This document shows positions 18,954 to 63,729 of a stretch of DNA of 64,000 bases, piece by piece (the first letter of the stretch is position 1; each line of letters opens with the position of its first letter). Below the pieces are notes generated by a model. That model ran no database searches. It was not told where the DNA came from and worked only from the letters and a program-made list of their open reading frames with translations. The position numbers were made by a program, and so were the translations under genes. Where the stretch lies: the IMG/VR virus record IMGVR_UViG_3300046787_000286, positions 62,001-126,000 of that record; one strand, written 5' to 3'.

Positions 18954-19336
18954 TAGCTAACTTCTTTGCGACCGTTACCTAAATCTGTTGTTCTAACATA
19001 AATGCCCGAGTTACGCATAGCTTCTTCTTGTTCCCATGTTTCCATTACAACATGCCTACACACATTCTGGAACCAACGATCAACAATATCAGATTCGGTA
19101 TCGTCTGCTTTCATTTGATACCCGGCACGAACTAAATTGCTAACAAACTTATCATTCCAGTCTAGCTCAAACGCACCTTGGTGTAAGTTGTCGGGATCGA
19201 TTTCCATGCTAACCATACTTACATATGGTTCACCACGTTCGTTAGCCAACTCTTTTTCTGTTTTCTTTTTAGGCTTTGGTAAGTCAACTACTTTGGCCTC
19301 TGGCTTCTTCTTTTTAAATCTATCAAATATTCCCAT
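18953..19336 (-). CDS. conserved hypothetical phage protein
   Basis: AGGAG RBS 7 nt before MGIFDRF. Confidence 0.7.
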   Translation of the reverse strand: MGIFDRFKKKKPEAKVVDLPKPKKKTEKELANERGEPYVSMVSMEIDPDNLHQGAFELDWNDKFVSNLVRAGYQMKADDTESDIVDRWFQNVCRHVVMETWEQEEAMRNSGIYVRTTDLGNGRKEVS

Positions 19337-19802
19337 TGTCATTCTCCTTAATTTCTTGCCAGGTGTAATCACCTAACCACTTAACCCGGGTTATGTATTC
19401 ATAACCTTCAGGGATACCGGTGGTCCAATCAGATGGACCCAGGATGCTCAATCTAGTAATATTCTTTCGATGATCGCATATTAGCCAGTATATATTACCA
19501 TGCGCAATTTGAAAGTCGTATTTGGCTGCATGTACCATGTCAGTAACAGCTAATCTATGTTTAATATCGTCTGCTTGTTTTTGTAACACAGAAACTAGAT
19601 CCATAATACGGTTGTATTCTTGCTCGGCATGCATACGAGCAACATTGATCATGATATCTTTTTGCTGCTCAACAGGAACTAGATCAAATTTAACACTACC
19701 TGCTTCCGTAGGGTACGGCGACACATTTCTATTAAAAAACGCAACCAGTGTATTACCACTGGTTATGTCAAAACTTTCTCTGCCCTTGGATACATTGGAC
19801 AC
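19323..19802 (-). CDS. DUF2452-like hypothetical protein
   Basis: PYPTEAGSVKF...AKYDFQ...GNIYWL pattern. Confidence 0.6.
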   Translation of the reverse strand: MSNVSKGRESFDITSGNTLVAFFNRNVSPYPTEAGSVKFDLVPVEQQKDIMINVARMHAEQEYNRIMDLVSVLQKQADDIKHRLAVTDMVHAAKYDFQIAHGNIYWLICDHRKNITRLSILGPSDWTTGIPEGYEYITRVKWLGDYTWQEIKENDNGNI

Positions 19803-19813
19803 TATATTTACTC

Positions 19814-20602
19814 TTACTTTTTAAACACAGGAATTGGATTCATCTTGTGTATGTTGCGAGCACGAATCTCTCGATACTTCTTGAGTTGTGCTTTTTCTGT
19901 CTTGGTCAATGCTAGTGGATCCCATACACAGTTATCAGCTTGATCTAGTGCCATTGCATGTTCTAACTCTGGGTAAGTCATTCCTAACTGTGACTCGTCT
20001 GTGCGGTCGTCGTCCCATAACCCATCTGTTGGCGGTGCGTTAATGATCTCTTGCTCGATGCCCAATTCTCGAGCTATAGCCCACACTTCAGTTTTTAAGC
20101 AGTCGCCAATTGGGCTGATGTCTACACCGCCGTCGCCATACTTGGTAAAGAAGCCAACACCAAAGTCTTCTACTTTATTGCCAGTGCCTACAACAATACC
20201 GTTATGGCATTGTGCAATTTGATACAGCGTCATCATACGTAAACGAGCACGTGAGTTTGCTGATGCTAGCTTGTATGTATCATATGTGTCATCCTCGATT
20301 CCACAGAAAGGATCTACTTTCTTTTCGAATGCAGAAAACACTGGAGTTAAATCCATGCTCATGTGTGTAACGTTGTCAAACCGCTCTACTAGCCAACCGG
20401 CATGCAATGAGCTACGTTTGTCTAGCTTTTTATTCTGACGAATTGGCATTTGCACAACAATAGTTTTCAGCCCGGTCTTGGCACATAAAGTGCTAACAAC
20501 TGAGCTATCGATGCCGCCGGAGATACCAACAACTAGTGTAGTGACCTTTGCCTTCTTGGCATAGTCTTTGATCCATTTTGTAATTTGTGCGTGTAATTTC
20601 AT
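19814..20602 (-). CDS. nadE: NH3-dependent NAD+ synthetase
   Basis: SGGIDS PP-loop, NSRARLRM, GTGNKVE, FFTKYGDG, PTDGL...TDE...LG..Y; start MKLHAQ overlaps the queE stop. Confidence 0.88.
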   Translation of the reverse strand: MKLHAQITKWIKDYAKKAKVTTLVVGISGGIDSSVVSTLCAKTGLKTIVVQMPIRQNKKLDKRSSLHAGWLVERFDNVTHMSMDLTPVFSAFEKKVDPFCGIEDDTYDTYKLASANSRARLRMMTLYQIAQCHNGIVVGTGNKVEDFGVGFFTKYGDGGVDISPIGDCLKTEVWAIARELGIEQEIINAPPTDGLWDDDRTDESQLGMTYPELEHAMALDQADNCVWDPLALTKTEKAQLKKYREIRARNIHKMNPIPVFKK

Positions 20603-21459
20603 TATTTCCCCCAACCATTTCCCCACAAGTCGACGTGTAGTCGTGGACTGTAGTTGTAACCTTTGCTTAGTGCCCAATCTGCAACCTTAACACGGTTAGC
20701 AGCATAAGGAGTAACAACACCGCCTTGTGGCATTACATATACAACCCCAGTAAAGCCACCTGCTCTAAATTCTTTCACAGCACGTTCGACTTCGGCAAAG
20801 TGTTCTTCTGTTTCAACAACGAACTTAAGATACGTTGTACCATAGTCTTGATACATGCGTACAATTTCTGGGCGAATAGCTTCTTCCCACAGTTCACCAC
20901 TTGCACTTAGTTTAGCACTAACACTAAATGTAATTTCATTACCAGGACGATCACCCCAGTCTAACAAGTAGTCAATGAACTTAGGTTGCAAAGTTTGTGT
21001 GCCATTTGTTTCAAATGTAATATTCTTCAAGTCTGCCATATCCGGATGATCCAGCAGCTCTTGGTAAGCACGTTGCCAGCCTAACAAAGGCTCGCCACCT
21101 GTGATAACCAAATGTACATCGTTGCCGTTATCCTGTACCCAATGTTTGTTGGGAGTCAACGCCAACATTTGATCCACTAGGTCTTTGGTCTCAACCATCG
21201 GACTCAGTTCTTTAAACGCAGGATGCCAACTTGCGTAGCTGTCGCATCCAGTATTAACAAGGGGTAGACTAGTAAAATCCTTATACATCTCGATGTTCTT
21301 CGCCACGTCGTCTGCCTCTTTCGAAGTCTCGCCCGGCTTGCAACCGAAGCCCGAACAAGTAAAGTTACATCCGAAGGTTCGTAAGAATACTGAAGGAACG
21401 CCAACAAAGCGTCCTTCGCCCTGGGCAGAGTAAAAGAGTTCACTGATTTTTAATTTCAT
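20602..21459 (-). CDS. queE: 7-carboxy-7-deazaguanine synthase
   Basis: ELFYSAQGEGRFVGVPSVFLRTFGCNFTC...CDS, ITGGEP, ETNGT, RLHVDLWG. Confidence 0.92.
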   Translation of the reverse strand: MKLKISELFYSAQGEGRFVGVPSVFLRTFGCNFTCSGFGCKPGETSKEADDVAKNIEMYKDFTSLPLVNTGCDSYASWHPAFKELSPMVETKDLVDQMLALTPNKHWVQDNGNDVHLVITGGEPLLGWQRAYQELLDHPDMADLKNITFETNGTQTLQPKFIDYLLDWGDRPGNEITFSVSAKLSASGELWEEAIRPEIVRMYQDYGTTYLKFVVETEEHFAEVERAVKEFRAGGFTGVVYVMPQGGVVTPYAANRVKVADWALSKGYNYSPRLHVDLWGNGWGK

Positions 21460-21512: not shown

Positions 21513-22211
21513 ATGCAACCATTAAATTTACCAAAACTTATTGACAGTCCAGGCTTCATGTTAGCAGCCGATACTGTGTACTTTCAAAAATGGACAAAGT
21601 ATTTGTTCTTCAGTATTAAGAAACATGCACCTTGGGCGCACGTACATTTTCATGTGTTTGATCCAACTGCGGAAGATTTAGCCTGGTTGTCGGCAGCAGA
21701 TTGTAGTTATACATTTGAAACAACCCCATTAGATTATTGCCAGTCACACCAGGACAAGGTTGTGTATTGGTGCGCTGCAAGATATATTCGAACTACTGAA
21801 ATATACACTGATTCAACTCCTGTGATTAACCTAGATGCCGATAGCATTATGGTTTCTAGTTTAAGTCAAGAGCAATTTTTAAAAGACCTTGAACATAGCT
21901 GGGTACCAGTTGCTCCAAAGAGAGAAACTAGAAGTTTGTGTAGTGCGTTAGGTCTAGGGACTGATAACGGACGCTACGATGTTAGAAATGTATTACTAGA
22001 GGTATATAACAACTCTAGATTAACCTGGGCATTAGACCAACGACTATGCGATCAACTGCTAGACTCAGGCAAACTACAAGCAATGGACTTACGATACACA
22101 GATTTCAAAATGAAAGATACCTCTTACATCTGGACTGGTAAAGGAGACAGAGTTGATAAGTCTAGTTTCCAAAATGCACTGCGCCCGTATATAGGGTTAG
22201 TATCTCGCTAA
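21513..22211 (+). CDS. glycosyltransferase-like protein (GT-A, DAD motif)
   Basis: INLDADSI, DQ near the C-terminus, WTGKG; TTAAATA late motif upstream. Confidence 0.5.
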   Translation: MQPLNLPKLIDSPGFMLAADTVYFQKWTKYLFFSIKKHAPWAHVHFHVFDPTAEDLAWLSAADCSYTFETTPLDYCQSHQDKVVYWCAARYIRTTEIYTDSTPVINLDADSIMVSSLSQEQFLKDLEHSWVPVAPKRETRSLCSALGLGTDNGRYDVRNVLLEVYNNSRLTWALDQRLCDQLLDSGKLQAMDLRYTDFKMKDTSYIWTGKGDRVDKSSFQNALRPYIGLVSR

Positions 22212-22994
22212 TGATTCTTTAAGTCCTAGCAACGGAAGTTTATATTTTTCTAATTTGTCACCGTTGCCTGTGTAACTCATTCCTTGCTCAGTAACTTCGA
22301 TAAGAGATTTGTCTAGATTGTGTGTGTCGCAGTAGATACCTAATGTCTCGCTAAGGGTATACTTTTCAGCATACACACAGTTAATGTCTCGATCGATTAT
22401 GTTTCCATTGAGTACTGCATTAATGACCGTAGTAAAATCTTCGGCGCTGATCATATCAAATTTTCTATCAGTGATACTGAACTTATTGCCTTGCGCTAGA
22501 GAGGAATGTAATTTTTTAAGTAATCTAGCATTGTCTTCAGACGAGTCGAAACACCCAAACAATCGCAAATTATAACACATAGAATGTGTCCACAAGCATC
22601 TAGATATAAGATTTTTACTCATCCCGTAACTTTGTTGCGGTGAACAAGTGAATATGCTAGATTCTCTAGCACAATCAATTGGCTGACTAATATCAAACTC
22701 TGCACCTGTGCCGATATTAATTAATGTATCAAACTCACGACTATTAGACATGAGATTCATCACAGACAGAAGATTACTATTAACTATGTTACGATCTTCG
22801 GCCCATGGTGTGTTGCGACCAGCTGCACCACAATGGATTACTGCATCATATCTATTATGTTGAAAATGATTGTGTGTTGCTTCTGCGTCAGACAAGTCAA
22901 GTTCCTGTCGCGTAAGTGCAACGACATTGTATTGTAAATGTCTAGCAAGGTACGAGCCGAGGAATCCCCCGGCCCCTGTAATCAAAACCTTCAA
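22197..22994 (-). CDS. NAD-dependent sugar epimerase/reductase (extended SDR; YerF-like position)
   Basis: TGAGGFLG, YGMSK. Confidence 0.85.
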   Translation of the reverse strand: MKVLITGAGGFLGSYLARHLQYNVVALTRQELDLSDAEATHNHFQHNRYDAVIHCGAAGRNTPWAEDRNIVNSNLLSVMNLMSNSREFDTLINIGTGAEFDISQPIDCARESSIFTCSPQQSYGMSKNLISRCLWTHSMCYNLRLFGCFDSSEDNARLLKKLHSSLAQGNKFSITDRKFDMISAEDFTTVINAVLNGNIIDRDINCVYAEKYTLSETLGIYCDTHNLDKSLIEVTEQGMSYTGNGDKLEKYKLPLLGLKESLARY

Positions 22995-24751
22995 CGAATT
23001 CTTTCGTAGTTAAAGTAAGGATTGCCAGCTGCAAATTCTTCGTCGCTAACTAGTGGTGATTGATCGTTGATTGGGCGACCTTTCTCTAGCTTGGGCTCAA
23101 TTTGCACACCTGGGTGAATCTTGATTTCGATGATCCTACGTCCAGGTGCAAGCAATTCTGCGTTAATTTGATCTAGTGATGTAACTAGTTTGTAATCAAA
23201 GTCGAATGCTTCAGCAATTTTCTTAAAGTTAGGACGCCCCGGACCATTTTCTGTAGCAGCGTGTCGCCCATCCATGTAAGCATCTTGGAATTGACAAATC
23301 ATGCCTAGGCGATTGTTGTTAAACACAATGACTTTAATGTCTAGATCATATTCTTTGACTGTTTGCAATTCTTGCAAGTTCATCTGAATGCCGCCGTCAC
23401 CGTTAGAACAAATGTGTTGACGGTCTGGCGCTACTAATGCTGCACCAATTGATGCTGGCAACGCATATCCCATTGCATAATGCCCGGAACTTGTCATTAA
23501 CAACTGATCTTGGTCGCGATGGAAAGACTGGTAAACCCAACAGTGGTTGGCACCTGCATCCGTAGTAATAACAGCATTGGGTTCTGCTACTTTTTGTAAT
23601 TTTTCAACAACAAGATACGGACTCATTGTATCGTATTGCTTGCTATTTGAACTTGTATCTTTGTTAAAATACTTTGCTTTAAGTCCTTGACAATACTTTG
23701 GCCAGTCAGCATCAAACTTAGGCTTCTCTACTCCACGCAAGGCTTTCGAAAGATTGCGCAAATCAAAATGTAATCCTTTATAGTTTGCAGGATCTAGCTT
23801 TTCTAACTCGGCAGGATCGAGATCAACACACAATATTTCTGCATTGGGTGCAAAGTTTGCAGGGTTACCTGAACGCTGACGGTTGTCTAAACGTGATCCT
23901 AGCACAAGGATCTTGTCTGCGTTTTGAATTGCATTATTGCCTCCACGATTACCATATACACCAAAGTGACCAATGTAGTTAGGTGCTTCGTGATTAAAGT
24001 AGTTGAGTGCTGCCCAGGTAGCAACAAACGGAATTTTATTTGATTGCAACCAGCGTTCGAGTTCTACTTGTTGACCAGCAAGTCCAACACCTGCACCAAA
24101 GATAATCAATGGGCGATGTGCGCCTCCCAGGAATTGTTGGATTACTTTTCCTACTTGTTCAGGGGAGATACCTGTATCAACTGCTAACCACTTATCAGAG
24201 TCTGGCAATAACATAGTGCTATCTTCCATTTCTGCATTTTGCAAGTTCATTGGAATGTCAACTAGCACTGGGCCCATGCGACCTGAATATGCTTCTTCTA
24301 CTGCACGTTTTAATTCACGACGCATATCGTCATGTGTGGTTACGTTAACAGCATATTTGCAAACAGGTTTAACCATGCTAACAATATCCATTTGTTGGAA
24401 ACCTGCTTGACGCACAGCAGCACCACGATAGAGCTTTTGTTCTTCGTAGTTGACTTGTCCAGTAATATGCAAGCTAGGAATAGAATCATAATAACCACAC
24501 GCAATACCTGTGATTAAGTTAGATGCTCCTGGCCCTGATGTTGCCATTGACACACCTAGTTGCCCATTGGTACGCCATAATGCATCAGCTGCCATTGCTG
24601 CGGCTTGTTCGTGCTGGAAGCAAATAACATCCATGCCCTCCTCTAGTGCAATTTGATCAATTAAGAATGTGATTGCACCACCTTGCACTTGGAACACTTT
24701 GTTTGCACCAATTGCTTTTAAAAACTTAGCTACGTATTGACTACCTTTCAT
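22991..24751 (-). CDS. ThDP-dependent acetolactate-synthase-like enzyme (YerE-like)
   Basis: HEQAAAMAADA, TSGPGASN, GDGGIQMNLQEL...NN ThDP motif; sits among NDP-sugar genes. Confidence 0.88.
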   Translation of the reverse strand: MKGSQYVAKFLKAIGANKVFQVQGGAITFLIDQIALEEGMDVICFQHEQAAAMAADALWRTNGQLGVSMATSGPGASNLITGIACGYYDSIPSLHITGQVNYEEQKLYRGAAVRQAGFQQMDIVSMVKPVCKYAVNVTTHDDMRRELKRAVEEAYSGRMGPVLVDIPMNLQNAEMEDSTMLLPDSDKWLAVDTGISPEQVGKVIQQFLGGAHRPLIIFGAGVGLAGQQVELERWLQSNKIPFVATWAALNYFNHEAPNYIGHFGVYGNRGGNNAIQNADKILVLGSRLDNRQRSGNPANFAPNAEILCVDLDPAELEKLDPANYKGLHFDLRNLSKALRGVEKPKFDADWPKYCQGLKAKYFNKDTSSNSKQYDTMSPYLVVEKLQKVAEPNAVITTDAGANHCWVYQSFHRDQDQLLMTSSGHYAMGYALPASIGAALVAPDRQHICSNGDGGIQMNLQELQTVKEYDLDIKVIVFNNNRLGMICQFQDAYMDGRHAATENGPGRPNFKKIAEAFDFDYKLVTSLDQINAELLAPGRRIIEIKIHPGVQIEPKLEKGRPINDQSPLVSDEEFAAGNPYFNYERIR

Positions 24752-24760
24752 GGTATCTCC

Positions 24761-26080
24761 TTATTTGTATAAACTTAAGAAACCGCGAACAATTTTACCA
24801 ATGTAGGCAATTTGTTCGGGTGTGATTACAGGGCTAGTACCATGGAAGTAAGTATGGGTCATAGCATGTGTTGCGTTAGGGAAATTGTCCTTGGCCAGCT
24901 GCGGGTCCATTAAATGGCTATAAGCAGGCTGCAACATAATATTGCCAGCAAAGTAAGGACGAGTCTGGATCAAGTTCTCTTCTAGGTAATCCACAATGTC
25001 ACTGCGAGTAAACGGTGCATCTTTTCTAATAGTTAACGGGAACGCAAACCAGCTGGGATCACTCTTGGCAGTTGCTCTTGGCAAGTGGAAGAACTCTTCA
25101 TAGTCCTTGTAAATGTCAAACAGCAGTTGATAGTTACGTCGACGCAATGCGTGAATTTCTGGTAACTTTTTCAACTGTTCAAGACCCATAGCACACTGAA
25201 CTTCAATTGGTTTCATGTTGTAACCAATTTCGTCGTATACGTATTTGTGATCAAAAATTTCATCAGGTAAAGTAGGAATCCAGTTATTAAAACGATTGCC
25301 ACAAGTACCACACTTCAATTTGTTTGCTTCTGGCCCAACACAATAGCAGCCACGCCCCCATTCACGGAAGCTACGCAAGATAACATCTGTATTGGCATCG
25401 TTAGTTGCAACGTATCCACCTTCGCCCATGGTCATGTGATGTGCTGGATAGAAACTGCACGATGCCATTAAACCGTAACTGCCCAATGGCTTGCCATCAT
25501 ATGTGCTACCTAACGCATCACAGCAATCTTCTAGAAGAATCAAATTGTGTTGTTTCACTAATTCCATTAATCGATCCATTACTGGAGGATTACCTAGCAC
25601 GTGAGCAAACGTAATAACACGAATATCAGGGTTAGCTAATAAGGTTGACTCAACTTGATCTAAATCTAAGTTAAGTGTATCAAGTTCAATGTCTACAAAC
25701 ACTGGCTCAAAACCAACTTGCAATGTTGGGTTTAACGTTGTTGGAAATCCAGCAATAGGCATTAGAACTTTAGTGCCCTTGGGTAGGTTGTAGCCACGCT
25801 TGGATGTCAACGCTGACATCATTAATAAGTTACTAGATGATCCTGAGTTTGTTAAGATACCTTTGTCTTTACCAAAATACTTCGGAAACTCACGTTCAAA
25901 CTTTAGGCCATCGTCGCCCATAACAAGCCAACCCTTGAGCAAACTTGCGACCCCTGCTACAAATTCTTTTTCGTCAAAATATGACCCGGCATAGTTGACA
26001 AAATCTTTGCCAGCTACCCATGTTTTATTTTCTTGCTTTTGTTTAATGTGCTCTTGCACTAATTTAAGAATTTCTTCCAT
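24761..26080 (-). CDS. rfbH: CDP-4-keto-6-deoxyglucose 3-dehydratase (E1, RfbH/DdhC)
   Basis: NSGSSSNLL, SFYPAHHMTMGEGG (His in place of Lys), RDC-like GRGCYC...C, DHKYVYDEIGYN. Confidence 0.88.
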   Translation of the reverse strand: MEEILKLVQEHIKQKQENKTWVAGKDFVNYAGSYFDEKEFVAGVASLLKGWLVMGDDGLKFEREFPKYFGKDKGILTNSGSSSNLLMMSALTSKRGYNLPKGTKVLMPIAGFPTTLNPTLQVGFEPVFVDIELDTLNLDLDQVESTLLANPDIRVITFAHVLGNPPVMDRLMELVKQHNLILLEDCCDALGSTYDGKPLGSYGLMASCSFYPAHHMTMGEGGYVATNDANTDVILRSFREWGRGCYCVGPEANKLKCGTCGNRFNNWIPTLPDEIFDHKYVYDEIGYNMKPIEVQCAMGLEQLKKLPEIHALRRRNYQLLFDIYKDYEEFFHLPRATAKSDPSWFAFPLTIRKDAPFTRSDIVDYLEENLIQTRPYFAGNIMLQPAYSHLMDPQLAKDNFPNATHAMTHTYFHGTSPVITPEQIAYIGKIVRGFLSLYK

Positions 26081-26802
26081 TAGATAATACCTACTTCTTT
26101 ACTGATAAATTGCATTAAATTGATAACTTGTTGACTGCCACGGCTAGCATGGAAGTGTAAGATACGAGCGTCTTTAAGATTGATCCCATTCCAGTTATTG
26201 TGTTCAATAACTTCTTCAGGAGACAATGTTCTGAGTTTCATTGCCTGGTACGCCAGCCACGGATGTAAACGATCAGTGTCCGGTATGTCTTGTTTCCAGA
26301 ACATAGTGTTGTGTCGTAGTTGATCAAACCCCCAGTGTTGATCAGGATGACCTTCTCGTTGTTCCCACAACTGATCCCCTAGATCCCAAATATCCTGGCT
26401 CATAGTATGAGGGTAGTACTGAATGTCATCATTAAAGTAATTTGTAAATTCTTTATATGATTTGGGGTCCGTGTAATTGAATAAGCGATATTCCTTGAAC
26501 TTACTATCAAACAATTTAGTAGGTTGGGTCATCAGTGTATCGGCACCAGCCCAGAAAATATTACACGGCTCTTTGTGCCAAAGTTCCTTGATTGCATTCC
26601 AGTTTGCTACTGTATACTCATCGTTGTTTTTTACAGGTTCTGTCCAAAGCACTGCTTCAAACGGCTCCTCAACAAACTTCTGAAAGCTAGCCACACTTAG
26701 GTCATACATTTGCCTGTAGAACGTATAAAGATCAGTTCGTTTTTGATGTAGCCATCCGTCCTCAATTGGACGGACAGCGCAAACTAGATAATTTTTTACC
26801 AT
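26080..26802 (-). CDS. glycosyltransferase-like hypothetical protein
   Basis: in the sugar operon; FWAGADT and ILHFHASR motifs resemble GT-A enzymes. Confidence 0.5.
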   Translation of the reverse strand: MVKNYLVCAVRPIEDGWLHQKRTDLYTFYRQMYDLSVASFQKFVEEPFEAVLWTEPVKNNDEYTVANWNAIKELWHKEPCNIFWAGADTLMTQPTKLFDSKFKEYRLFNYTDPKSYKEFTNYFNDDIQYYPHTMSQDIWDLGDQLWEQREGHPDQHWGFDQLRHNTMFWKQDIPDTDRLHPWLAYQAMKLRTLSPEEVIEHNNWNGINLKDARILHFHASRGSQQVINLMQFISKEVGII

Positions 26803-27776
26803 ACAAAGTTCTCAATGTAATATTGTACTATCTCTTCTAGGGCTGTGTCAAAGACTGATTGCGGGTACCATCCCAGCCCCTTGAGTTTCGAGTCATCGAT
26901 TGCGTACCTTACATCTTGCCCCATACGCTGACTATCAAAAATATAATCTTCCCAATTATCCGAAGCATCTTCACCTTTGTAGATTTTTAGAAGCTTCTTG
27001 ATAACTTCTCGGTTGGGCATTTCGGCATTTCCTGAAATATTGTATATCTCATTAGTAACACCTGATTTGATAATAGTTACAACAGCAGTAGCAGTATCAG
27101 CAGCATGCAACCAAGTACGCACAGGTTTTCCTTGATCGTGAAGATCAATTTTCTTACCTAGCGTTAGGTATTTGATTGACTTAGGGATAAGTTTTTCAAC
27201 ATACTGTCCTGTGCCATAGTTATTGGTTGGTCGGACAATAACATACTTTAAGCCATATGTTCTAGCCCACGCAGTAATAAGCATGTCGGCAGCAGCTTTA
27301 CTTGCTGAGTATGGATTACTAGGCTTTAACAAATCTGTTTCTGAATGAGTACCTGCTTCAATGTCGCCGTAAACTTCGTCTGTTGAGAAATGTAAAAATA
27401 CAGGTTGCTTGTGTCGCGGCTGTTCTTTGATTAGTTCTAGTAGATGATGCACACCATTTACATTACTGTGCAAAAATACTCCACTGCTCATAATACTATT
27501 ATCAACGTGAGTTTCTGCAGCCATGTTAATAACATAGTCGCAATCGTGTAACCGATCTAGTTCATTGATATCAGTCTTGATAAACTTAAATGTTTTGTAT
27601 TTTTTAAATTTTTCTAAGAAGTGTTCATTACTAGCATAGGTACATTTATCTACACCTATAACATACCAACCCCGAGCTAGTAATTCGTGAGTCACATGCG
27701 ACCCCATAAACCCAAGGCATCCAGTTACATAAACTATCTTCTTCAAATCTTTCTCGCTTTGACTAATAAATGCCAT
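26796..27776 (-). CDS. rfbB: NDP-glucose 4,6-dehydratase (RmlB-like)
   Basis: TGCLGFMG, AAETHVDNSI, STDEVYG, PYSASKAA, NNYG. Confidence 0.9.
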   Translation of the reverse strand: MAFISQSEKDLKKIVYVTGCLGFMGSHVTHELLARGWYVIGVDKCTYASNEHFLEKFKKYKTFKFIKTDINELDRLHDCDYVINMAAETHVDNSIMSSGVFLHSNVNGVHHLLELIKEQPRHKQPVFLHFSTDEVYGDIEAGTHSETDLLKPSNPYSASKAAADMLITAWARTYGLKYVIVRPTNNYGTGQYVEKLIPKSIKYLTLGKKIDLHDQGKPVRTWLHAADTATAVVTIIKSGVTNEIYNISGNAEMPNREVIKKLLKIYKGEDASDNWEDYIFDSQRMGQDVRYAIDDSKLKGLGWYPQSVFDTALEEIVQYYIENFVW

Positions 27777-28522
27777 CCGAGATATTCTCGAACAGCTTCA
27801 CGCATTGCATCTGGCATAGCAGCAAACCATGGCTCTAATTCATAGCGGCCTGCCTTATACGCATCTACATTATACATAAAGCAATGATCCTGACGTACAC
27901 GTTCTATATGCCAGCCTGGACCCAACAACTCAGGAATTTCTTCTTTGGTGAAACTTTTAGCATACGGGCAACCAGCTTGTGCTTCGTATTGGTCAAGCCC
28001 TTTATAAATCATTGCTTGCTTCCAGGAATTCTTCGCGTATACCATGAAGCGGAACTCTCCACCAGGATTAAGCAACGAGTGTACATTGTTGATTATAGTA
28101 TTGATTGCTGGAAAGTGATGAATAACACCATAGCTGTAAACAAGATCAAATTTTCCCAGGTTTGCAGTGTCGGTGCTATTACTTGCATCAATGTTATGGA
28201 ATTCTCCATCGAGCCCTAGTACTTCAAAACGTTGTCGAGCAATTTCCACACTTTGGTCACTGTAGTCAATGCCTACATATTCTGCACCGTGCTTGGCAAA
28301 TTCTTCGCCGTCGCTAGCAATACCACATCCAACTTCTAAAACACGTTTGCCTTGCCACAAATGAAATCCAGCAAATTCTGGAATGTGCGGCTCCACTTGA
28401 TATCGACGTTCGCTAACTTGATGGAAAAACTTTGGTGTTCCAAACTCAGCTGTGCCGTGTTTGATATTACAAGGCTGTGCATTCCAATATTTTTTAATTC
28501 GTGCCTCTAACTCGTCACTCAT
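27743..28522 (-). CDS. class I SAM-dependent methyltransferase
   Basis: VLEVGCGIASDG, FDLVYSYGVIHH, LNPGG. Confidence 0.85.
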   Translation of the reverse strand: MSDELEARIKKYWNAQPCNIKHGTAEFGTPKFFHQVSERRYQVEPHIPEFAGFHLWQGKRVLEVGCGIASDGEEFAKHGAEYVGIDYSDQSVEIARQRFEVLGLDGEFHNIDASNSTDTANLGKFDLVYSYGVIHHFPAINTIINNVHSLLNPGGEFRFMVYAKNSWKQAMIYKGLDQYEAQAGCPYAKSFTKEEIPELLGPGWHIERVRQDHCFMYNVDAYKAGRYELEPWFAAMPDAMREAVREYLGWHLLVKARKI

Positions 28523-29349
28523 GCTGCACCCATCTTTGTCATTGGTATTTGGAATTGTTTGCATTGATTATTGGTATCATTTTCTTGTAGTTTAATCCAC
28601 GGGTCTTGTTTACCAGACTTGACGTTTGCCCACCAGGTGATATCCAAGTTCTTAGATGCCATGTAATCAGATAGCTTTTCAACGTCTTGCATTCTACGCA
28701 AGTGCCAACTCACGTGATGAAAATCTCTCGAGTCTGATGGATTGCCTTCGTACATAACACGATTTTTGTAAGTGTCATCATTGTTATTGCCAGTGAGATC
28801 ATGACGATCGTGTGTGACCCAAACAGGAACCCTTTCGAAAATATCCAACAAGTAAGCCTGTTGACTTAGCCAAGCATCAGAAATCTGATGTGGACTTAGA
28901 TATCCCAAATGGTCTAACCATTCTCGAGGGACGATAGGGAAAATTGAATATGGATGATCGTTGTGTGTATGAACAGCCAAACATTTAAACTCCCCTGTGT
29001 GTTTAGCAATAACCTTGTCCCACCCAGCGGTGTCCATCATTGCATCGTCGTTCCAGAACATTAACCAATCAGCGTCAGACGACACTGCAAGAGCGTTAAC
29101 ATATTCGTTTAATCTATTGTATCCAAGTCTTTCAAAAACTTGTGCATCATAGTTGACTTTTTTCTCAATTAACCACGGCTCCAATTCGTTTTGGAAATGT
29201 TCGATGCCAGGTGTATCATCGTGATCGAACCCTAGTAATAGTTGAACTGTGTTTAAATCAACTGCTCGGTTAATTAAACTCATTACGCTGCGGCTTAGCG
29301 CATCTGTGCGTCCTCGTGTGGGTAGTAAAATTGCAATGCTATATTTCAT
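28519..29349 (-). CDS. GT2-family glycosyltransferase
   Basis: LLPTRGR, FDHDD, WNDD motifs. Confidence 0.75.
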   Translation of the reverse strand: MKYSIAILLPTRGRTDALSRSVMSLINRAVDLNTVQLLLGFDHDDTPGIEHFQNELEPWLIEKKVNYDAQVFERLGYNRLNEYVNALAVSSDADWLMFWNDDAMMDTAGWDKVIAKHTGEFKCLAVHTHNDHPYSIFPIVPREWLDHLGYLSPHQISDAWLSQQAYLLDIFERVPVWVTHDRHDLTGNNNDDTYKNRVMYEGNPSDSRDFHHVSWHLRRMQDVEKLSDYMASKNLDITWWANVKSGKQDPWIKLQENDTNNQCKQFQIPMTKMGAA

Positions 29350-29386: not shown

Positions 29387-29884
29387 TTACGCAAATAGAT
29401 CTTCGTTCCATTCACGGTGGCCTTCTCGATACGCCATGTTGCTTTGTGTTTCGCGCACTTCAACACGATAGCACCATAAACGATCTGCTTCGCCAGGTCC
29501 CCACATCTCAGGAATGTAAACACCATTTACATACTTGTACAGCATGTCGCTTAGTGCTTCACAACCTAGTGCAGGTAGCACAACGATCTTGGCCATGTTC
29601 TTCTCTTGTAGCAGTTTAAATGTTTCCAACTCTGGATCATCTTGTGCAACAATAAGCGTATGGTCGAATTGGTCTTCCAGTGTCTTCTTTAGTTCCTTGA
29701 GACCGCCGTAGTCTGCGGCCCAGTTACGAACGTCTAGATCATTGGTTCCAAAATAGAACTTCATTGAAAAAGCGTAGCCGTGGATTAAGTTACAGTGACT
29801 ATCAGCACGCCATTGTCTGTAAGCAACAGGGAAGGCGTTGTGATACTCTTTTGTAGAGGTGTATTTGTATTGGATGGGTGTCAT
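29387..29884 (-). CDS. queD: 6-carboxy-5,6,7,8-tetrahydropterin synthase
   Basis: HCNLIHGY (CxxxHG), FDHT, VEVRET. Confidence 0.88.
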   Translation of the reverse strand: MTPIQYKYTSTKEYHNAFPVAYRQWRADSHCNLIHGYAFSMKFYFGTNDLDVRNWAADYGGLKELKKTLEDQFDHTLIVAQDDPELETFKLLQEKNMAKIVVLPALGCEALSDMLYKYVNGVYIPEMWGPGEADRLWCYRVEVRETQSNMAYREGHREWNEDLFA

Positions 29885-32288: not shown

Positions 32289-32990
32289 TTAACGTGGTGC
32301 AAACTCTTGTTGAAGTTTGATGTTGTCAAAGAACTCTTTCTTTACCGAAGCATCTGTCTTAAATGCACCATTAAGAACTGTCGTCTGGGTGAGACTAGAG
32401 TGAGCCATAATACCACGATTCTCACAGCATCCATGGGTAGCTTGGATATAAACTGCAACATCTTTGGATCCAGTTGCAAATTCAATTTCACGAGCGATGT
32501 CCATACAGAGTTCTTCTTGTAGTGTTCCTCGTCGAGCACACCATTGCGCAATTCGAGTGTATTTCGAAAGGCCAATGAGTTTTGGTCCAGCAATAATGCC
32601 AATATAAGCCACACCCGTAACAGGCTGGTGATGATGCGAACACATGCTCTTAAGCTCTGAACGCACAACCAACATACCATCGTAGGCTCCTTCTGTATCA
32701 TTGGGGAAAGCCGTAGCATTAGGGCTCTCCTCGTATCTGCCAGCCATGATTTCATATACATACATCTTTGCTAAACGGCGTGCTGTACCCATTGAGTTTG
32801 GATCGTTTTGTCGATCAATAATCAAACTGTCTAGCACACCTTCAAACTTGCCTGTGAGCTCATCCACTAGCAAGTCTTTTTCTTTATCAGTAATAAAGTC
32901 ACTGATGTTATCACCTGCCCAGTAACGCTTGTCTGCGTCAGTTAATCGTTTGCGAATTACTTGTGATAGGTTTAAACTGTTGTCTGTCAT
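32289..32990 (-). CDS. folE: GTP cyclohydrolase I
   Basis: SMCSHHHQP, GLSKYTR, QEEL, HGCCENRG. Confidence 0.95.
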   Translation of the reverse strand: MTDNSLNLSQVIRKRLTDADKRYWAGDNISDFITDKEKDLLVDELTGKFEGVLDSLIIDRQNDPNSMGTARRLAKMYVYEIMAGRYEESPNATAFPNDTEGAYDGMLVVRSELKSMCSHHHQPVTGVAYIGIIAGPKLIGLSKYTRIAQWCARRGTLQEELCMDIAREIEFATGSKDVAVYIQATHGCCENRGIMAHSSLTQTTVLNGAFKTDASVKKEFFDNIKLQQEFAPR

Positions 32991-32991
32991 A

Positions 32992-33585
32992 TTAGTCCTT
33001 AATTGTGATGGTTCTTAAATCTGGGTATTCAACTAGCTTGGGTTTAACTGGAAACTCTTTAATACCTTGCAGTAGTGCAATTCCTTTGACTGCTTCTTCT
33101 GGTGTAGGTTTATAGTGATAACCAACCCTAAACTCTTTCTGTTGTTCCCACGGTGATATATTTAGATCGCGACCGTCGTATCGCATACGAATTATTACAT
33201 CATACGCTGCTTTGTCATCTAACAGTATAGCACCACCACGGCCTATATGTAAAGGCTTTGTGTGCCCAAAGCTCAAACATTGCATTTGCCCTTCGCGATA
33301 CATGTTCTTTTCTAGTCTACGTGCTGAATCCCAAATTCGAGTTTTTCTAAACTTGTATTCGCCTACCCACTGTTCATTACCTTCGTAGTAGTATTGAATT
33401 TTCAACTTGTGCATTAGCATCGGAATACTCAAGTAAGTAAAAGGTGTGAACGCACAAAACTCAACCTTGTCATATCTCATACAAAGCTCAATAGCGTGAG
33501 TGCAACAATCGGTCATGATTGCATACGGTGCGCCAGTATATTCTGCTAGTGCGATTTCAAATCGATTAATATCGTCAAATGTCAT
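32992..33585 (-). CDS. short DegT/DnrJ-type PLP aminotransferase-like protein
   Basis: DCCTHAIEL, DSA, SFGHTKPL..GRGGAIL. Confidence 0.75.
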   Translation of the reverse strand: MTFDDINRFEIALAEYTGAPYAIMTDCCTHAIELCMRYDKVEFCAFTPFTYLSIPMLMHKLKIQYYYEGNEQWVGEYKFRKTRIWDSARRLEKNMYREGQMQCLSFGHTKPLHIGRGGAILLDDKAAYDVIIRMRYDGRDLNISPWEQQKEFRVGYHYKPTPEEAVKGIALLQGIKEFPVKPKLVEYPDLRTITIKD

Positions 33586-34532
33586 TTGTTATACCAATTC
33601 CATGCATGTTGAATCATTGCATCTAAATCGTGGTGACGCCAAGCTCCAGCTACTAAATCGAACTTAGCCGAAGTAGCAGTTAACGTTGCAGGATCTCCAG
33701 ACCGTGCTGCACTGATATGAATATTAGGACGCTTACCGGTAATTTCTGTTGCACGTAGTATCACCTGCTGAACTGAGTGTCCATGATTTGATCCAAGATT
33801 ATAGATACCTGCAGGAATCTTGTGATAGATCGCCAAAGCATGTGCTCTAGCAATGTCTTCAACATGAACATAATCACGAACGCAGGTACCGTCAGCAGTA
33901 GGGTAATCCATCCCATAAACCTCAAATGTAGATCCATCCTTTGCAGCCTCTAAGAATTTAGCAATTAAATGAGTAGCACCTGGCTCTTGTCCATGGCAGC
34001 CCTTTGGGTCAGCACCACAGGCATTAAAATAACGAAAGCTAACGTAGTCCAAGCCATATGCTCGATGATATGACTTTAGAATCATGTCAATCATATACTT
34101 GCTTTCGCCATAAGGACTAATAGGTAATTCCGGGAACGATTCGTCTATTGGATTCAGCACTGGCTCGCCGTATGTAGCTGCTGAAGAACTAAAAATAAAT
34201 TTAGTCTTAGGTAAACTCTTGCGAACAATGTCCAACAACTTTAGAGTTTTAACCACATTGTTGTTGTAGTATTCACTAGGATCTTTTACACTTGGTCCAA
34301 CAAGACTAGTGCCAGCACAGTGAATAATAGCATCAGGTTGTTTTGCAATAATCCAGCTTAGAGCCACATCGCTAGCAAAGTCCTGGTACAAGTATCCGTC
34401 GCACACGCCTAACAAATGCTTAGGCGGATCTCTACGATCGATGCCGTACACCACGTGCCCTGCGTCTTTCAACAACAGGGCAGTTTGTCCGCCAATGTAG
34501 CCGGCTGAGCCAGTAACAATTACAGTTGACAT
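33582..34532 (-). CDS. galE: UDP-glucose 4-epimerase
   Basis: GSAGYIG, SSSAATYG, PYGESK, RYFNACG, DGTCVRDYVHV. Confidence 0.9.
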   Translation of the reverse strand: MSTVIVTGSAGYIGGQTALLLKDAGHVVYGIDRRDPPKHLLGVCDGYLYQDFASDVALSWIIAKQPDAIIHCAGTSLVGPSVKDPSEYYNNNVVKTLKLLDIVRKSLPKTKFIFSSSAATYGEPVLNPIDESFPELPISPYGESKYMIDMILKSYHRAYGLDYVSFRYFNACGADPKGCHGQEPGATHLIAKFLEAAKDGSTFEVYGMDYPTADGTCVRDYVHVEDIARAHALAIYHKIPAGIYNLGSNHGHSVQQVILRATEITGKRPNIHISAARSGDPATLTATSAKFDLVAGAWRHHDLDAMIQHAWNWYNK

Positions 34533-61725: not shown

Positions 61726-63729
61726 TTATTTTTTCTCGTCTACGTAGTCTTCGTCAACGGATTGTTGCACAGGGCTTGTGCCCAAAACGGTTGCATTTTT
61801 ACTATCGGCCCAGGCGTGTGCAGCTTCAGCTGATGGGAACGTCTTGCGCCACATCACACGTTGGTCACGGCGGTCGTAAACATAACCATATGCTTCCACT
61901 GGTCCTGCTTCCTCTGCTACTTGTTCTGGTTTGAATTCCAAAGCACCTTGTGTATTGCCCATAATGATATTGGCAATCTTGTAGATGTTGTCAAACGTCA
62001 AATCAAAGTGACGCTCAAACGGATGTCCTTTTAGTAAACTAAATGTAGTAAGTAGTTTACCTTTTATTTGTCCGGTAAGGCCGCCTCCGGTATACTTGCC
62101 AACTTGAATACTACCGCGTGTGCTTACTGCACCTTTGTTACGTCCACCCGCTCTAGTCTCATAGTATGAGTAAAGCATTGTTGGGCCATACTCCATTGGG
62201 TCGTGTGGAACAAAGCGGGCTTTGATTGTTGTCTTTACAACGTTTTCTACACAGTCGAAGTCTTTGGCTACAATTTGTTTTACTTGTTCAATGAATTCGG
62301 GCCATGGAATAAACTTACGTGATCCACCACCTTCATCCGGAACAAATTCGGTTAAGTGGGCTTCGTTCATTTTACCATCACTACTAAATCCATAATATTT
62401 CGCTACATCTTGTAAATCACTAGGACGGTACTTGTTGAGAAAGTCTGATATTAAATCGTGGATGTGTCCGGAGTTCCCTGCTTGGTCTAATGCACCGGGC
62501 AAAGGTATTTCACCATATTTCCATCTAATATGCACACCACCAGGACTGTCTATGTACCAACGTCTTCCGTCCCAGTCTAAACCAAATTTATCTACTGTTA
62601 CTTTTAGTTGTATGTCTTTGGCCGGAGTACCTGGCACAGTCTCGCACCATATGTCAAATTGATTGTTGCGTAGATATCTTGATTTGTATGGCTTGCCGAA
62701 GTTTGGCGGCACATATCTGTCTCCATCATCGCCATTACCTGGAGCGAACTCGTTTAGTTGGTCAGCTAGTTGTTCTTCACTCCAGCCAATGTAGCTATCA
62801 CTATCATCGTCGCCGATACGCATAACATACGCACCGCCTTCCTCGCTTTCAAGCTCGCCAATTTCCCAACCGACTTTGGCTAAGGCTTGTTCTACTCGAC
62901 GTTGTGTAGCTACATCTGGGGCAGAATACCACATTTTAGCAAATCGAAGTAACACATCTTCGGGGTCATTTTCTCTGTCGTTACCACTGCCGGGTGCAAA
63001 TTCGTTTAGTTCTTCATCTTCAGTCATGCTAAAGTCCTTCTTCATGAAGTCCTTGGTTCTAGACACTGCTGGCTGTATTTTTTTAAGTTTAGGTGGCTTG
63101 CTTCTAAACATCACAGAACCTAGCATATTACTTTCGTCTAGCGTGGTACCCATGGCTGCGTCTAGCATTTTAACAACAGTAGCAGCAAGTTTAGGATTTA
63201 TTTGTGTTTTTGGGTACAAACTCATTACAAGAGCTGTCTTACGTCTAGTATCCAATGTGGGCCATGCTGTGCGTATTTCTGTAGCACTAGTCATACCAGG
63301 ACCAAACTCCACTGTGGGCAAGTAAGCCATGTAAGCATGCTTATTCATCGGAGCAAGTTCATCTTGTCCTTCATAAGGTTGCAAGTATGCAGGGTTGCCA
63401 TCTTTTTTAACGCCGCCTGCTTGTGGTGGTTTGTTTGCGTCCTTTTCCGAACGTACAAAAATTAATTGGGTGGTTTCGGGATCAAAGTGATCTGTAACTT
63501 CTCGTGCTTGAAACGGTGACTTAACTTGTATGAATTTACCAGGATTAACGCCTGCTAGTTTAGCAAGTTTTTCTTTAACAGCAAACGGGAATGGTCTAGC
63601 GGATGTGTCGTTGGTTGCAGCCACATAGACATCTGCGCCGGGGAAAGCATCTTGTGCTTGTTGGTATAGTGCGTAATGGCCAGCGTGGAACGGATGAAAT
63701 CCGCCTGGCATGATAATAACTTGCTTCAT
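61726..63729 (-). CDS. HIGH-motif cytidylyltransferase-family domain + modular C-terminal segments
   Basis: PGGFHPFHAGH, SATEIR; three L(N/T)EF(A/V)P-headed segments; late motif CTAAATA at 63736. Confidence 0.75.
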   Translation of the reverse strand: MKQVIIMPGGFHPFHAGHYALYQQAQDAFPGADVYVAATNDTSARPFPFAVKEKLAKLAGVNPGKFIQVKSPFQAREVTDHFDPETTQLIFVRSEKDANKPPQAGGVKKDGNPAYLQPYEGQDELAPMNKHAYMAYLPTVEFGPGMTSATEIRTAWPTLDTRRKTALVMSLYPKTQINPKLAATVVKMLDAAMGTTLDESNMLGSVMFRSKPPKLKKIQPAVSRTKDFMKKDFSMTEDEELNEFAPGSGNDRENDPEDVLLRFAKMWYSAPDVATQRRVEQALAKVGWEIGELESEEGGAYVMRIGDDDSDSYIGWSEEQLADQLNEFAPGNGDDGDRYVPPNFGKPYKSRYLRNNQFDIWCETVPGTPAKDIQLKVTVDKFGLDWDGRRWYIDSPGGVHIRWKYGEIPLPGALDQAGNSGHIHDLISDFLNKYRPSDLQDVAKYYGFSSDGKMNEAHLTEFVPDEGGGSRKFIPWPEFIEQVKQIVAKDFDCVENVVKTTIKARFVPHDPMEYGPTMLYSYYETRAGGRNKGAVSTRGSIQVGKYTGGGLTGQIKGKLLTTFSLLKGHPFERHFDLTFDNIYKIANIIMGNTQGALEFKPEQVAEEAGPVEAYGYVYDRRDQRVMWRKTFPSAEAAHAWADSKNATVLGTSPVQQSVDEDYVDEKK

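What the first reader, a model, noticed from the sequence alone, without database searches (positions are those of the whole stretch)
19814..21459. NadE translationally coupled to queE: NAD+ rescue or CDG amidation?
Seen: nadE starts on the queE stop (TAATG) and keeps the NaAD-binding motifs. Established: the described phage NAD+ reconstitution pathways use Adps/Namat or Nampt/Nmnat, not NadE. NadE and QueC both adenylate a carboxylate and add NH3. Inference: either an additional NAD+ restoration route (with the HIGH-motif enzyme at 61726) against NAD-depleting defences, or a QueC substitute converting CDG to 7-amido-7-deazaguanine. The retained motifs favour the first.
Basis: partly seen in the sequence, partly recalled or inferred. 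Interest (0 to 1): 0.6.

Follow-up and report, generated by a model that had tools for sequence, protein, structure and literature searches.

The report
Ordinary phage NAD synthetase beside queE
The gene after queE in this freshwater jumbo phage is a standard ammonia-dependent NAD+ synthetase of a type already annotated in marine phages, and its place next to queE is a local gene-order accident of one phage lineage, not evidence that it stands in for QueC.

Summary
On the minus strand a QueE-like radical SAM gene (20602-21459) ends in TAATG on the start of a 262-aa NadE (19814-20602). The NadE scores well above family cut-offs and folds like solved NadE enzymes. It matches 83 of 84 positions that are at least 95% conserved in its nearest cellular relatives. 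Those relatives are the sole NadE of SAR11 and flavobacterial genomes that also carry NadD.

Stop/start overlap is the rule in this genome: 49% of same-strand neighbours overlap. The queE-nadE adjacency is confined to two sublineages. Three near-complete relatives keep both genes 75-81 kb apart. Cyanophages carry this NadE without any QueE, and Synechococcus phage BUCT-ZZ01 carries the QueC-less QueE module without NadE.

No Nampt/NaPRT and no clear NMNAT was found, so a dedicated NAD+ rescue pathway is not shown. The most likely function is NaAD + ATP + NH3 -> NAD+, as an auxiliary metabolic gene.

Two things remain unexplained. NadE is very often paired with a UDP-glucose-dehydrogenase-like gene in phages. 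No QueC and no TGT-type DpdA was found in complete relatives that make CDG.

The parts
19814..20602 (-). nadE: single-domain, NH3-dependent-type NAD+ synthetase, 262 aa (P0001)
   Evidence: PF02540 177.9 bits, TIGR00552 183.1 bits, phrog_11189 281.7 bits. Best PDB sequence hit is 3FIU at 131.7 bits. The AlphaFold model has pLDDT 81.9 and all listed top Foldseek PDB hits are NadE, TM 0.78 to 3FIU. 83/84 cellular-conserved columns are identical.
20602..21459 (-). queE-like radical SAM enzyme, probable 7-carboxy-7-deazaguanine synthase, 285 aa (P0002)
   Evidence: phrog_2076 'QueE-like radical SAM domain' 175.7 bits. Weak hits to five QueE NCBIfam models, 34-40 bits. The N-terminal ELFYSAQGEG...GC motif aligns to solved QueE structures 6NHL and 4NJG. 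36-47% identical to the QueE of KVP40/nt-1-like vibriophages and BUCT-ZZ01.
20600..20604 (-). TAATG stop/start overlap between queE and nadE
   Evidence: Read directly from the sequence. This kind of overlap is common in the genome. One related contig in a freshwater metagenome carries a TT insertion behind 20601.
20608..20612 (-). GGGGG Shine-Dalgarno-like run, 5 nt upstream of the nadE ATG and inside the queE 3' end
   Evidence: Sequence reading; its role is inferred.
21558..21587 (-). sigma-70-like promoter match about 100 nt upstream of queE
   Evidence: Consensus scan: TTGAAA-18-TAACAT with TG, 9 of 12. Fewer matches were found than in shuffles, so this is weak evidence.
19742..19765 (-). 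terminator-like hairpin plus T-run, 49 nt downstream of the nadE stop
   Evidence: Consensus scan. It lies inside the longest reading of the next ORF (GTG start at 19802), so either that ORF starts later (ATG at 19652) or the hairpin is not a terminator.
29387..29884 (-). QueD/PTPS-family protein (P0123), upstream step of CDG synthesis
   Evidence: PF01242 55.3 bits; TIGR03367 32.8 bits, below cut-off; motif CNLIHGY.
32289..32990 (-). FolE, GTP cyclohydrolase I, first step of CDG synthesis
   Evidence: PF01227 131.7 bits; NF006824 134.9 bits.
61726..63729 (-).
   Evidence: PF01467 17.5 bits, below cut-off. Atlas neighbours are virus-only CTP_transf_like clusters. More than 2300 phage homologues of the N-terminal domain exist. 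The fold ties PPAT (Z 10.4) with NadD/NadM (Z 9.4). No link to nadE is shown.

Best explanation
P0001 is a functional ammonia-dependent NAD+ synthetase. It adenylates the nicotinate carboxylate of NaAD with ATP, ammonia then displaces AMP, and NAD+ results.

[quoted passage not shown] In this phage it is probably co-transcribed and translationally coupled with queE only because both sit in a densely packed, shuffled block of metabolic genes.

Shown: family membership, fold, intact conserved residues, closest kinship to housekeeping NadE, and non-conservation of the queE linkage. Inferred: the substrate (NaAD), the physiological benefit, and the operon structure.
For: Family, fold and motifs.

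Kinship with housekeeping enzymes. The nearest cellular homologues (52-58% identity) are mostly Pelagibacteraceae, in a conserved core context with no QueE or UGDH next to them. In complete SAR11 and flavobacterial genomes this is the only true NadE: it scores 160-173 bits, while the other hits at 33-37 bits fall in longer ORFs that are probably other PP-loop enzymes such as GMP synthase. NadD is present over its cut-off. Those homologues should therefore be NaAD-using NAD synthetases.

Residues. 83/84 columns conserved in the cellular enzymes are identical in the window protein. No phage clade shows convergent or radical substitutions. In the tree the jumbo-phage NadEs sit in a well-supported (SH-aLRT 98) clade with SAR11, Chloroflexota and HTVC008M NadEs.

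Gene order. Of 80 viral relatives, 35 have QueE within a few genes upstream, only 16 abut it, and 39 have neither QueE nor UGDH nearby. G003, G004 and G005 keep single copies of both genes 75-81 kb apart.

Independent distribution. There are NadE-positive, QueE-negative isolates and 77 such contigs. BUCT-ZZ01 is QueE-positive and NadE-negative.

Overlapping starts are the norm here. Cyanomyovirus NAD synthetase is already listed as an expressed AMG in field metatranscriptomes (PMC7238727).
Against: No biochemical data exist for any phage NadE.

The best PDB match is the Francisella enzyme that prefers NaMN (3FIU), so NaAD versus NaMN is not settled.

The phage encodes no other recognisable NAD pathway gene, so the benefit of a lone last-step enzyme is unclear.

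The very frequent pairing of phage NadE with a UDP-glucose-dehydrogenase-like gene inside glycan clusters (72 of 77 within three genes) is not explained by general NAD+ supply.

Complete relatives make CDG but lack QueC, which leaves a gap that a carboxylate amidase could fill.

The cellular comparison set is dominated by SAR11, which inflates the count of conserved columns.
Confidence: 0.7

Rival explanations
1. Francisella-type route. P0001 is an NMN synthetase (NaMN -> NMN), and a phage HxGH nucleotidyltransferase such as the 667-aa protein at 61726 adenylates NMN to NAD+. This would give a two-step phage NAD+ pathway.
For: The best sequence and structure match in the PDB is the F. tularensis NMN synthetase 3FIU: 131.7 bits against 94.9 for the next hit, TM 0.78/0.85. 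All five jumbo genomes carry the phage-specific HxGH nucleotidyltransferase. Its relative in G001 has archaeal NMNAT as its best NCBIfam hit, at 34 bits over the N-terminus only. NadD/NadM structures are among the top fold matches.
Against: The closest cellular homologues are the sole NadE of genomes that have NadD, the standard NaAD route. The nucleotidyltransferase fold ties with PPAT, Z 10.4 against 9.4. All family scores for it are below cut-offs. It is 41 kb from nadE. No NaMN-forming enzyme was found.
Confidence: 0.1
2. Sugar-acid amidation. The phage NadE family adenylates and amidates the carboxylate of an NDP-uronic acid made by the UDP-glucose-dehydrogenase-like enzyme, giving a uronamide for a phage-directed glycan.
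For: A UGDH-like gene is the immediate neighbour in HTVC008M, P-TIM68 and S-SSM7, and one gene away in Bellamy. It is the neighbour in 24 jumbo 'group B' loci. In cyanophage-type loci it is adjacent in 51 of 77 and within three genes in 72 of 77, in the order epimerase-NadE-(MTase)-UGDH-GT-GT-GT. The pairing appears in three separate NadE lineages and never in 80 cellular loci. All five jumbo genomes have one UGDH. The chemistry, carboxylate adenylation followed by NH3 attack, fits.
Against: No substitutions distinguish UGDH-linked NadEs from housekeeping ones. N116, R120, R122 and H252-K253 are all kept, and the only changes are conservative, such as F147Y and S163A. In this phage UGDH lies 126 kb away, and in G003-G005 it is also far from nadE. 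As far as I know there is no precedent for a NadE-family enzyme acting on sugars; the known uronate amidases are asparagine-synthetase-like or ATP-grasp enzymes.
Confidence: 0.1
3. QueC substitute. P0001 amidates CDG, or a CDG ribonucleotide made by the phosphoribosyltransferase found next to queE in relatives, to the 7-amido form. This would supply an ADG-type base in phages that lack QueC.
For: FolE, QueD and QueE are present, but QueC is absent from this record and from a complete 337-kb relative with terminal repeats; the only PF06508 hit is NadE's own PP-loop. In this phage queE and nadE overlap. G001 has PRT-QueE-(small ORF)-NadE in a row. A 7-carboxy-7-deazapurine nucleotide resembles NaMN in the spacing of carboxylate and ribose (inference).
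Against: NadE occurs without QueE in P-TIM68, S-SSM7 and Bellamy and in 77 of 77 cyanophage-type loci, where no QueE lies within the fetched flanks. The QueC-less QueE-PRT-QueD-FolE module occurs without NadE in BUCT-ZZ01. The linkage is broken in G003-G005. NaAD-site residues are unchanged. No TGT/DpdA was detected to put a base into DNA, although the DpdA3 and DpdA4 subfamilies were first recognised by HHpred (PMC10516641) and may also escape the Pfam TGT model. Host QueC could finish the pathway.
Confidence: 0.05
4. Dedicated counter-defence. The canonical NadE activity is kept specifically to refill NAD+ after Thoeris, SIR2 or other NADase defences.
For: NAD+ depletion is a common defence, and phages carry NAD+ rebuilding pathways: NARP1/2 (bioRxiv 10.1101/2024.02.11.579819) and NARP3 (PMC13464706). 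NadE is a near-core gene of this jumbo-phage group: 5 of 5 genomes and 421 IMG/VR relatives.
Against: NADases yield ADP-ribose plus nicotinamide, and NadE needs NaAD. No Nampt/NaPRT, Adps/Namat or PnuC/NadR-type partner was found. The term NadE does not occur in the NARP1/2 or NARP3 papers (occurrence counts). The closest kin are housekeeping genes.
Confidence: 0.12

Closest known systems
NH3-dependent NAD+ synthetase NadE (PF02540 / TIGR00552), in particular the housekeeping NadE of Pelagibacteraceae and Flavobacteriales
   Same: Single PP-loop synthetase domain of about 250-260 aa. SGGxDS loop and all family motifs present. 52-58% identity. 83 of 84 conserved columns identical. Same fold.
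   Different: Encoded by a jumbo phage and placed behind queE. Two clade-specific conservative changes, Y152F and A166G. Scores below the equivalog-level cut-offs of NCBIfam (NF010587: 186.8 against 255).
Phage NAD synthetase AMG (phrog_11189): Pelagibacter phage HTVC008M gp161, Prochlorococcus phage P-TIM68 gp179, Synechococcus phages S-SSM7 and Bellamy
   Same: Same protein family, 46-57% identity, in a hypervariable block of sugar and metabolic genes of large marine or freshwater myovirus-like phages.
   Different: In those phages the neighbour is a UDP-glucose-dehydrogenase-like gene and QueE is absent (weak radical-SAM hit only in HTVC008M). Here the neighbour is queE and UGDH is 126 kb away.
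Francisella tularensis NMN synthetase (PDB 3FIU)
   Same: Best solved-structure match by sequence (131.7 bits) and by fold (TM 0.78/0.85). Compact single-domain form.
   Different: Only 29% identity. The closest cellular kin of the phage enzyme live in genomes with NadD, not the NadM-only Francisella arrangement. Substrate preference was not testable here.
QueC, 7-cyano-7-deazaguanine synthase (PF06508)
   Same: Same PP-loop ATP-pyrophosphatase superfamily and the same chemistry on a carboxylate. It would act next after QueE.
   Different: Similarity is limited to the PP-loop: 13.5 bits over model positions 3-41, cut-off 22. There is no CxxC-type cysteine cluster; the cysteines are at 40, 100, 132, 168 and 226. 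No QueC structure is among the listed top fold matches.
Phage NAD+ reconstitution pathways NARP1 (Adps/Namat), NARP2 (Nampt/Nmnat) and NARP3 (PnuC/NadR)
   Same: Phage-encoded NAD+ synthesis.
   Different: Those pathways start from NADase products or nicotinamide riboside. NadE needs NaAD. No NAPRTase/Nampt-family gene and no clear NMNAT or NadR-like match was found here; Adps/Namat and PnuC were not searched for.

Membership tests
NAD+ synthetase NadE (PF02540 / TIGR00552) | Score above the curated family cut-offs over the whole domain | tested here: met
   PF02540 177.9 bits (cut-off 21), residues 5-255. TIGR00552 183.1 bits (cut-off 63.65).
NAD+ synthetase NadE (PF02540 / TIGR00552) | Equivalog-level NCBIfam cut-offs (NF010587, NF001979) | tested here: not met
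   186.8 against 255 and 109.9 against 250. The protein belongs to a subfamily these equivalog models do not represent, so the family-level call stands.
NAD+ synthetase NadE (PF02540 / TIGR00552) | PP-loop SGGxDS, plus the Asn/Arg motif, the TK.GDG loop, the P-T-x-x-L loop and the C-terminal HK pair, which line the ATP and NaAD sites (site roles from my own knowledge of the B. subtilis and E. coli structures) | tested here: met
   S28GGIDS33, N116/R120/R122, T153-K154, G156DG, P191TDGL, H252-K253. 83 of 84 cellular-conserved columns are identical.
NAD+ synthetase NadE (PF02540 / TIGR00552) | NadE fold | tested here: met
   Model pLDDT 81.9, pTM 0.83. All listed Foldseek PDB hits (to rank 45) are NadE or NMN synthetase, TM 0.64-0.78 for the single-domain enzymes.
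NAD+ synthetase NadE (PF02540 / TIGR00552) | Catalyses NaAD + ATP + NH3 -> NAD+ + AMP + PPi | not testable with these tools
   Needs an enzyme assay or complementation.
QueC (PF06508) | Family score above cut-off beyond the PP-loop | tested here: not met
   13.5 bits, model positions 3-41 only, cut-off 22. The same picture holds in five relatives.
QueC (PF06508) | Zinc-binding cysteine cluster (my own knowledge of QueC structures) | tested here: not met
   P0001 has five scattered cysteines and no CxxC motif.
Phage 7-deazaguanine DNA modification system | DpdA/TGT-family transglycosylase, the signature protein according to PMC10516641 | tested here: inconclusive
   No PF01702 match in this record, in four near-complete relatives or in BUCT-ZZ01. 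However, the DpdA3 and DpdA4 subfamilies were first recognised by HHpred and may be missed by the Pfam model, and this record is only 62% complete.
Phage 7-deazaguanine DNA modification system | FolE, QueD and QueE present | tested here: met
Phage NAD+ reconstitution pathways (NARP1/2/3) | Nampt/NaPRT, Adps/Namat or PnuC/NadR gene pair | tested here: not met
   PF04095 is absent from 5 of 5 genomes. The cytidylyltransferase-like genes are RfaE/TagD-like. Adps/Namat and PnuC were not searched for specifically.

The most novel reading that the evidence does not exclude
In QueC-less jumbo phages with no TGT-type DpdA detected, CDG made by FolE-QueD-QueE is turned into a ribonucleotide by the phosphoribosyltransferase that sits next to queE in relatives. 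NadE, whose normal substrate is also a ribonucleotide carrying an aromatic carboxylate, then moonlights as the amidase that makes a 7-amido-7-deazaguanine nucleotide. This would be a pre-replicative, QueC-independent route to ADG-type bases.
Probability: 0.05. Interest if true: 0.8.

Novelty: new member of a known kind. Interest (0 to 1): 0.3.

Why it matters
If the ordinary reading is right, this adds a freshwater jumbo-phage lineage to the marine phages already known to carry a host-like NAD+ synthetase. There are hundreds of IMG/VR relatives and thousands of metagenomic proteins. It also shows that a lone last-step NAD+ enzyme is a widespread viral auxiliary gene, distinct from the described NARP counter-defence pathways. 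It is a caution as well: stop/start overlap in a densely packed phage genome is not evidence of a shared pathway.

Two side observations could matter more than the finding itself. First, phages pair NadE with a UDP-glucose-dehydrogenase-like gene almost invariably. Second, a CDG-making module occurs with a phosphoribosyltransferase but without QueC or a recognisable DpdA.

Tried and rejected
- **Partner genes for an NAD+ pathway.** No NAPRTase/Nampt and no NAD-dependent DNA ligase as an NAD+ sink. The small cytidylyltransferases are RfaE/TagD-like.
- **The 667-aa HIGH-motif protein.** I folded its N-terminal domain and searched the PDB twice. PPAT and NadD/NadM tie, so no function can be assigned.
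- **QueC and TGT/DpdA.** None found in the own record, four near-complete relatives and BUCT-ZZ01. DpdA3 and DpdA4 may be missed.
- **The phosphoribosyltransferase of G001.** No homologue in this record's 214 kb; the record is incomplete.
- **Residue-shift test** for UGDH-linked against unlinked NadEs: nothing convergent.
- **Residue-level NaAD versus NaMN determinants.** The Francisella paper (PMC2651253) is not held, so this was not done.
- **Literature on NadE with 7-deazaguanine in phages.** The hits I opened were reference-list or AMG-list mentions.
- **Public reads**. Only fragmentary contigs of relatives from freshwater and wetland metagenomes. The one RNA run gave 33-48-nt pieces with mismatches, so there is no evidence on transcription.
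- **The first word search with P0001** returned only close metagenomic relatives. Cellular kin came from the genome-contig scan instead.
- **Not used.** The big representative search and the complex predictor were not needed.
Full report
**What is there.**
The window is bases 62001-126000 of a 214,006-bp IMG/VR virus record. It is linear, CheckV estimates 62% completeness, and GC is 42%. Near-identical DNA occurs in freshwater and wetland metagenomes.

The finding's coordinates hold two minus-strand genes. One is a QueE-like radical SAM gene, 21459->20602 (285 aa, P0002). The other is a NadE gene, 20602->19814 (262 aa, P0001). The queE stop and the nadE start share one base (TAATG, 20604-20600). 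A GGGGG run lies 5 nt upstream of the ATG.

A promoter-like match lies about 100 nt upstream of queE. A terminator-like hairpin with a T-run lies 49 nt after nadE. Together they would make a two-gene unit, but both are consensus matches only.

**Identity of the two proteins.**
P0001 matches PF02540 at 177.9 bits, TIGR00552 at 183.1 bits and phrog_11189 'NAD synthetase' at 281.7 bits. Its best solved relatives are all NadE enzymes, led by the Francisella NMN synthetase 3FIU. An AlphaFold model (pLDDT 81.9) matches only NadE structures at the top of the PDB list.

P0002 is weak against cellular QueE models but strong against the phage QueE-like family phrog_2076, at 175.7 bits. It is 36-47% identical to the QueE of KVP40/nt-1-type vibriophages and of Synechococcus phage BUCT-ZZ01.

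FolE (32289-32990) and a QueD-family gene (29387-29884) lie upstream. They are interspersed with sugar-nucleotide genes: an ALS-like TPP enzyme, a DegT aminotransferase, epimerases/dehydratases, a methyltransferase and a glycosyltransferase.

**Is the overlap meaningful?**
In this record 124 of 252 same-strand neighbouring ORF pairs overlap, 20 by one base and 56 by four. The overlap is therefore the genome's normal packing.

I fetched 80 viral relatives of NadE, at 59-96% identity, out of 421 in IMG/VR. They fall into three context groups:
- **Group A**, the window's own clade: QueE-NadE-(DUF2452)-hyp-DUF6071-FEN. QueE abuts NadE in 11 of 14 loci and is separated by a 157-185-nt spacer in 3.
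- **Group B**, 24 loci: QueE-(0-3 small ORFs)-NadE-UGDH-hyp-DUF6071-FEN. QueE abuts NadE in only 5.
- **Group C**, 39 loci: NadE among unrelated genes (a cell-wall hydrolase, a 480-aa radical SAM, MoxR/DUF2201, a methyltransferase, a cytidylyltransferase), with no QueE or UGDH nearby.

Five related genomes, four of them 92-100% complete at 320-344 kb, each have one NadE, one QueE and one UGDH-like gene. In G003, G004 and G005, NadE and QueE are 75-81 kb apart. In this record UGDH is 126 kb from nadE. On the NadE tree, group A nests inside group C, and group B is a separate clade.

**Independent distribution.**
The isolate phages P-TIM68, S-SSM7 and Bellamy carry this NadE (46-48% identity) but no QueE-like gene. 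HTVC008M (57% identity) has only a weak radical SAM hit. In 77 further cyanophage-type NadE loci, QueE is never within the fetched flanks.

Conversely, BUCT-ZZ01 has the closest isolate QueE in a QueE-XGPRT-hyp-QueD-FolE cluster. It has neither NadE nor QueC nor a TGT match. So neither gene needs the other.

**What the NadE looks like at residue level.**
The nearest cellular homologues (52-58% identity) are mostly Pelagibacteraceae. There are also Flavobacteriales, marine group II archaea, Chloroflexota and Marinimicrobia. All sit in conserved cellular contexts without QueE or UGDH.

In complete SAR11 and flavobacterial genomes this is the only real NadE. NadD is present over its cut-off, which is the standard NaMN->NaAD->NAD+ route.

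Of 84 columns that are >=95% conserved in those 80 cellular proteins, 83 are identical in the window protein. These include the PP-loop, the Asn/Arg motif, the TK.GDG loop and the C-terminal HK pair.

I compared cellular, jumbo-phage (UGDH-linked and unlinked), cyanophage and HTVC008M NadEs column by column. Only conservative, lineage-specific changes appear, and nothing is convergent among the UGDH-linked enzymes. This is the main reason to read P0001 as a canonical NAD+ synthetase.

**The NAD+ rescue idea.**
No NAPRTase/Nampt family gene exists in any of the five genomes. The small cytidylyltransferases are RfaE-domain-II/TagD-like. There is no NAD-dependent ligase.

More than 2300 phage proteins with variable C-termini share this domain. 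Its model resembles PPAT (Z 10.4) and NadD/NadM (Z 9.4) about equally. A NadD- or NadM-like role is possible but unsupported.

The described phage pathways are NARP1/2 (bioRxiv 10.1101/2024.02.11.579819) and NARP3 (PMC13464706). The term NadE does not occur in either text, and NARP3 consists of a PnuC-like transporter and a NadR-like enzyme. NadE alone cannot use the NADase products.

**The QueC-substitute idea.**
The record and a complete relative with terminal repeats do lack QueC; the only PF06508 hit is NadE's own PP-loop. No TGT-type DpdA was found either, though DpdA3/4 may escape the Pfam model (PMC10516641).

G001 has a phosphoribosyltransferase just upstream of queE, as does BUCT-ZZ01. 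This hints that CDG is made into a nucleotide there.

That keeps a small opening for NadE acting on a carboxy-deazapurine nucleotide. The independent distribution and the unchanged active site argue against it.

**Unexplained.**
Phage NadE is strikingly often paired with a UDP-glucose-dehydrogenase-like gene: adjacent in 51 of 77 cyanophage-type loci, within three genes in 72 of 77, and also in HTVC008M and in group B. The pairing occurs across three NadE lineages and never in cells.

Either NAD+ supply is coupled to this NAD+-consuming step, or the enzyme has a second role in uronate amidation. The sequence data favour the first.

**Verdict.**

This is a new member of an already annotated kind of phage auxiliary gene. 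A cyanomyovirus NAD synthetase is listed among expressed AMGs in PMC7238727.

Public reads added nothing on transcription.

Noticed in passing
L185-L264, L001-L004 and group B loci such as L070:10001-12300; in this genome UGDH is at G000:C1:208643-209884 (outside the window): Phage NadE is paired with a UDP-glucose-dehydrogenase-like gene. It is adjacent in 51 of 77 cyanophage-type loci and within three genes in 72 of 77. The typical order is epimerase-NadE-(MTase)-UGDH-GT-GT-GT. The pairing is never seen in 80 cellular loci. No active-site shift accompanies it.
   Followed up: partly
window 20602-21459, 29387-29884, 32289-32990; G001 (L096:8353-8883); L184:8995-11775: FolE-QueD-QueE module without QueC and without a Pfam-detectable TGT/DpdA, both in a complete 337-kb relative and in Synechococcus phage BUCT-ZZ01. 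In both, a xanthine/guanine-type phosphoribosyltransferase sits next to queE, which suggests a CDG-nucleotide route. No such PRT was found in this record's 214 kb.
   Followed up: partly
window 61726-63729 (-): 667-aa protein whose first ~200 residues form an HxGH nucleotidyltransferase domain. More than 2300 phage proteins share the domain at 68-88% identity, with very variable C-termini, some fused to P-loop kinase domains. The fold ties PPAT with NadD/NadM.
   Followed up: partly
window 22197-29349 and 32992-34532 (-): Sugar-nucleotide cluster: SDR epimerase/reductase, acetolactate-synthase-like TPP enzyme (586 aa), DegT aminotransferase, GDP-mannose-dehydratase-like enzyme, SAM methyltransferase, glycosyltransferase, and further on a short DegT-like ORF and another epimerase. 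A TPP enzyme in such a cluster suggests a branched or otherwise unusual sugar.
   Followed up: no
window 34533-35723 (-): 396-aa protein with no Pfam or PHROG match, yet 64-65% identical to a hypothetical protein of BUCT-ZZ01 and of G001. That is unusually conserved for an unannotated phage protein. In BUCT-ZZ01 its homologue lies about 3 kb from FolE.
   Followed up: no
window 21340-21370 (codons 31-40 of queE) and 29780-29800 (QueD-like): The QueE cysteines are spaced C31-x3-C35-x4-C40, not the CxxxCxxC seen in E. coli QueE. The QueD-family protein has CNLIHGY where QueD has CxxxHGH.
   Followed up: no
window 19323-19802 (-): DUF2452-family ORF directly after nadE, in the place where group B relatives have UGDH. 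The terminator-like hairpin at 19765-19742 falls inside its longest reading, so its true start may be the ATG at 19652.
   Followed up: no
window 20601: One contig of a related phage in a freshwater metagenome (run X4) has TT inserted behind 20601, which alters the stop/start overlap.
   Followed up: no
L002:1-60 (P-TIM68 gp170): P-TIM68 has a second short gene (435 nt) annotated 'NAD synthetase', about 5 kb upstream of its NadE.
   Followed up: no
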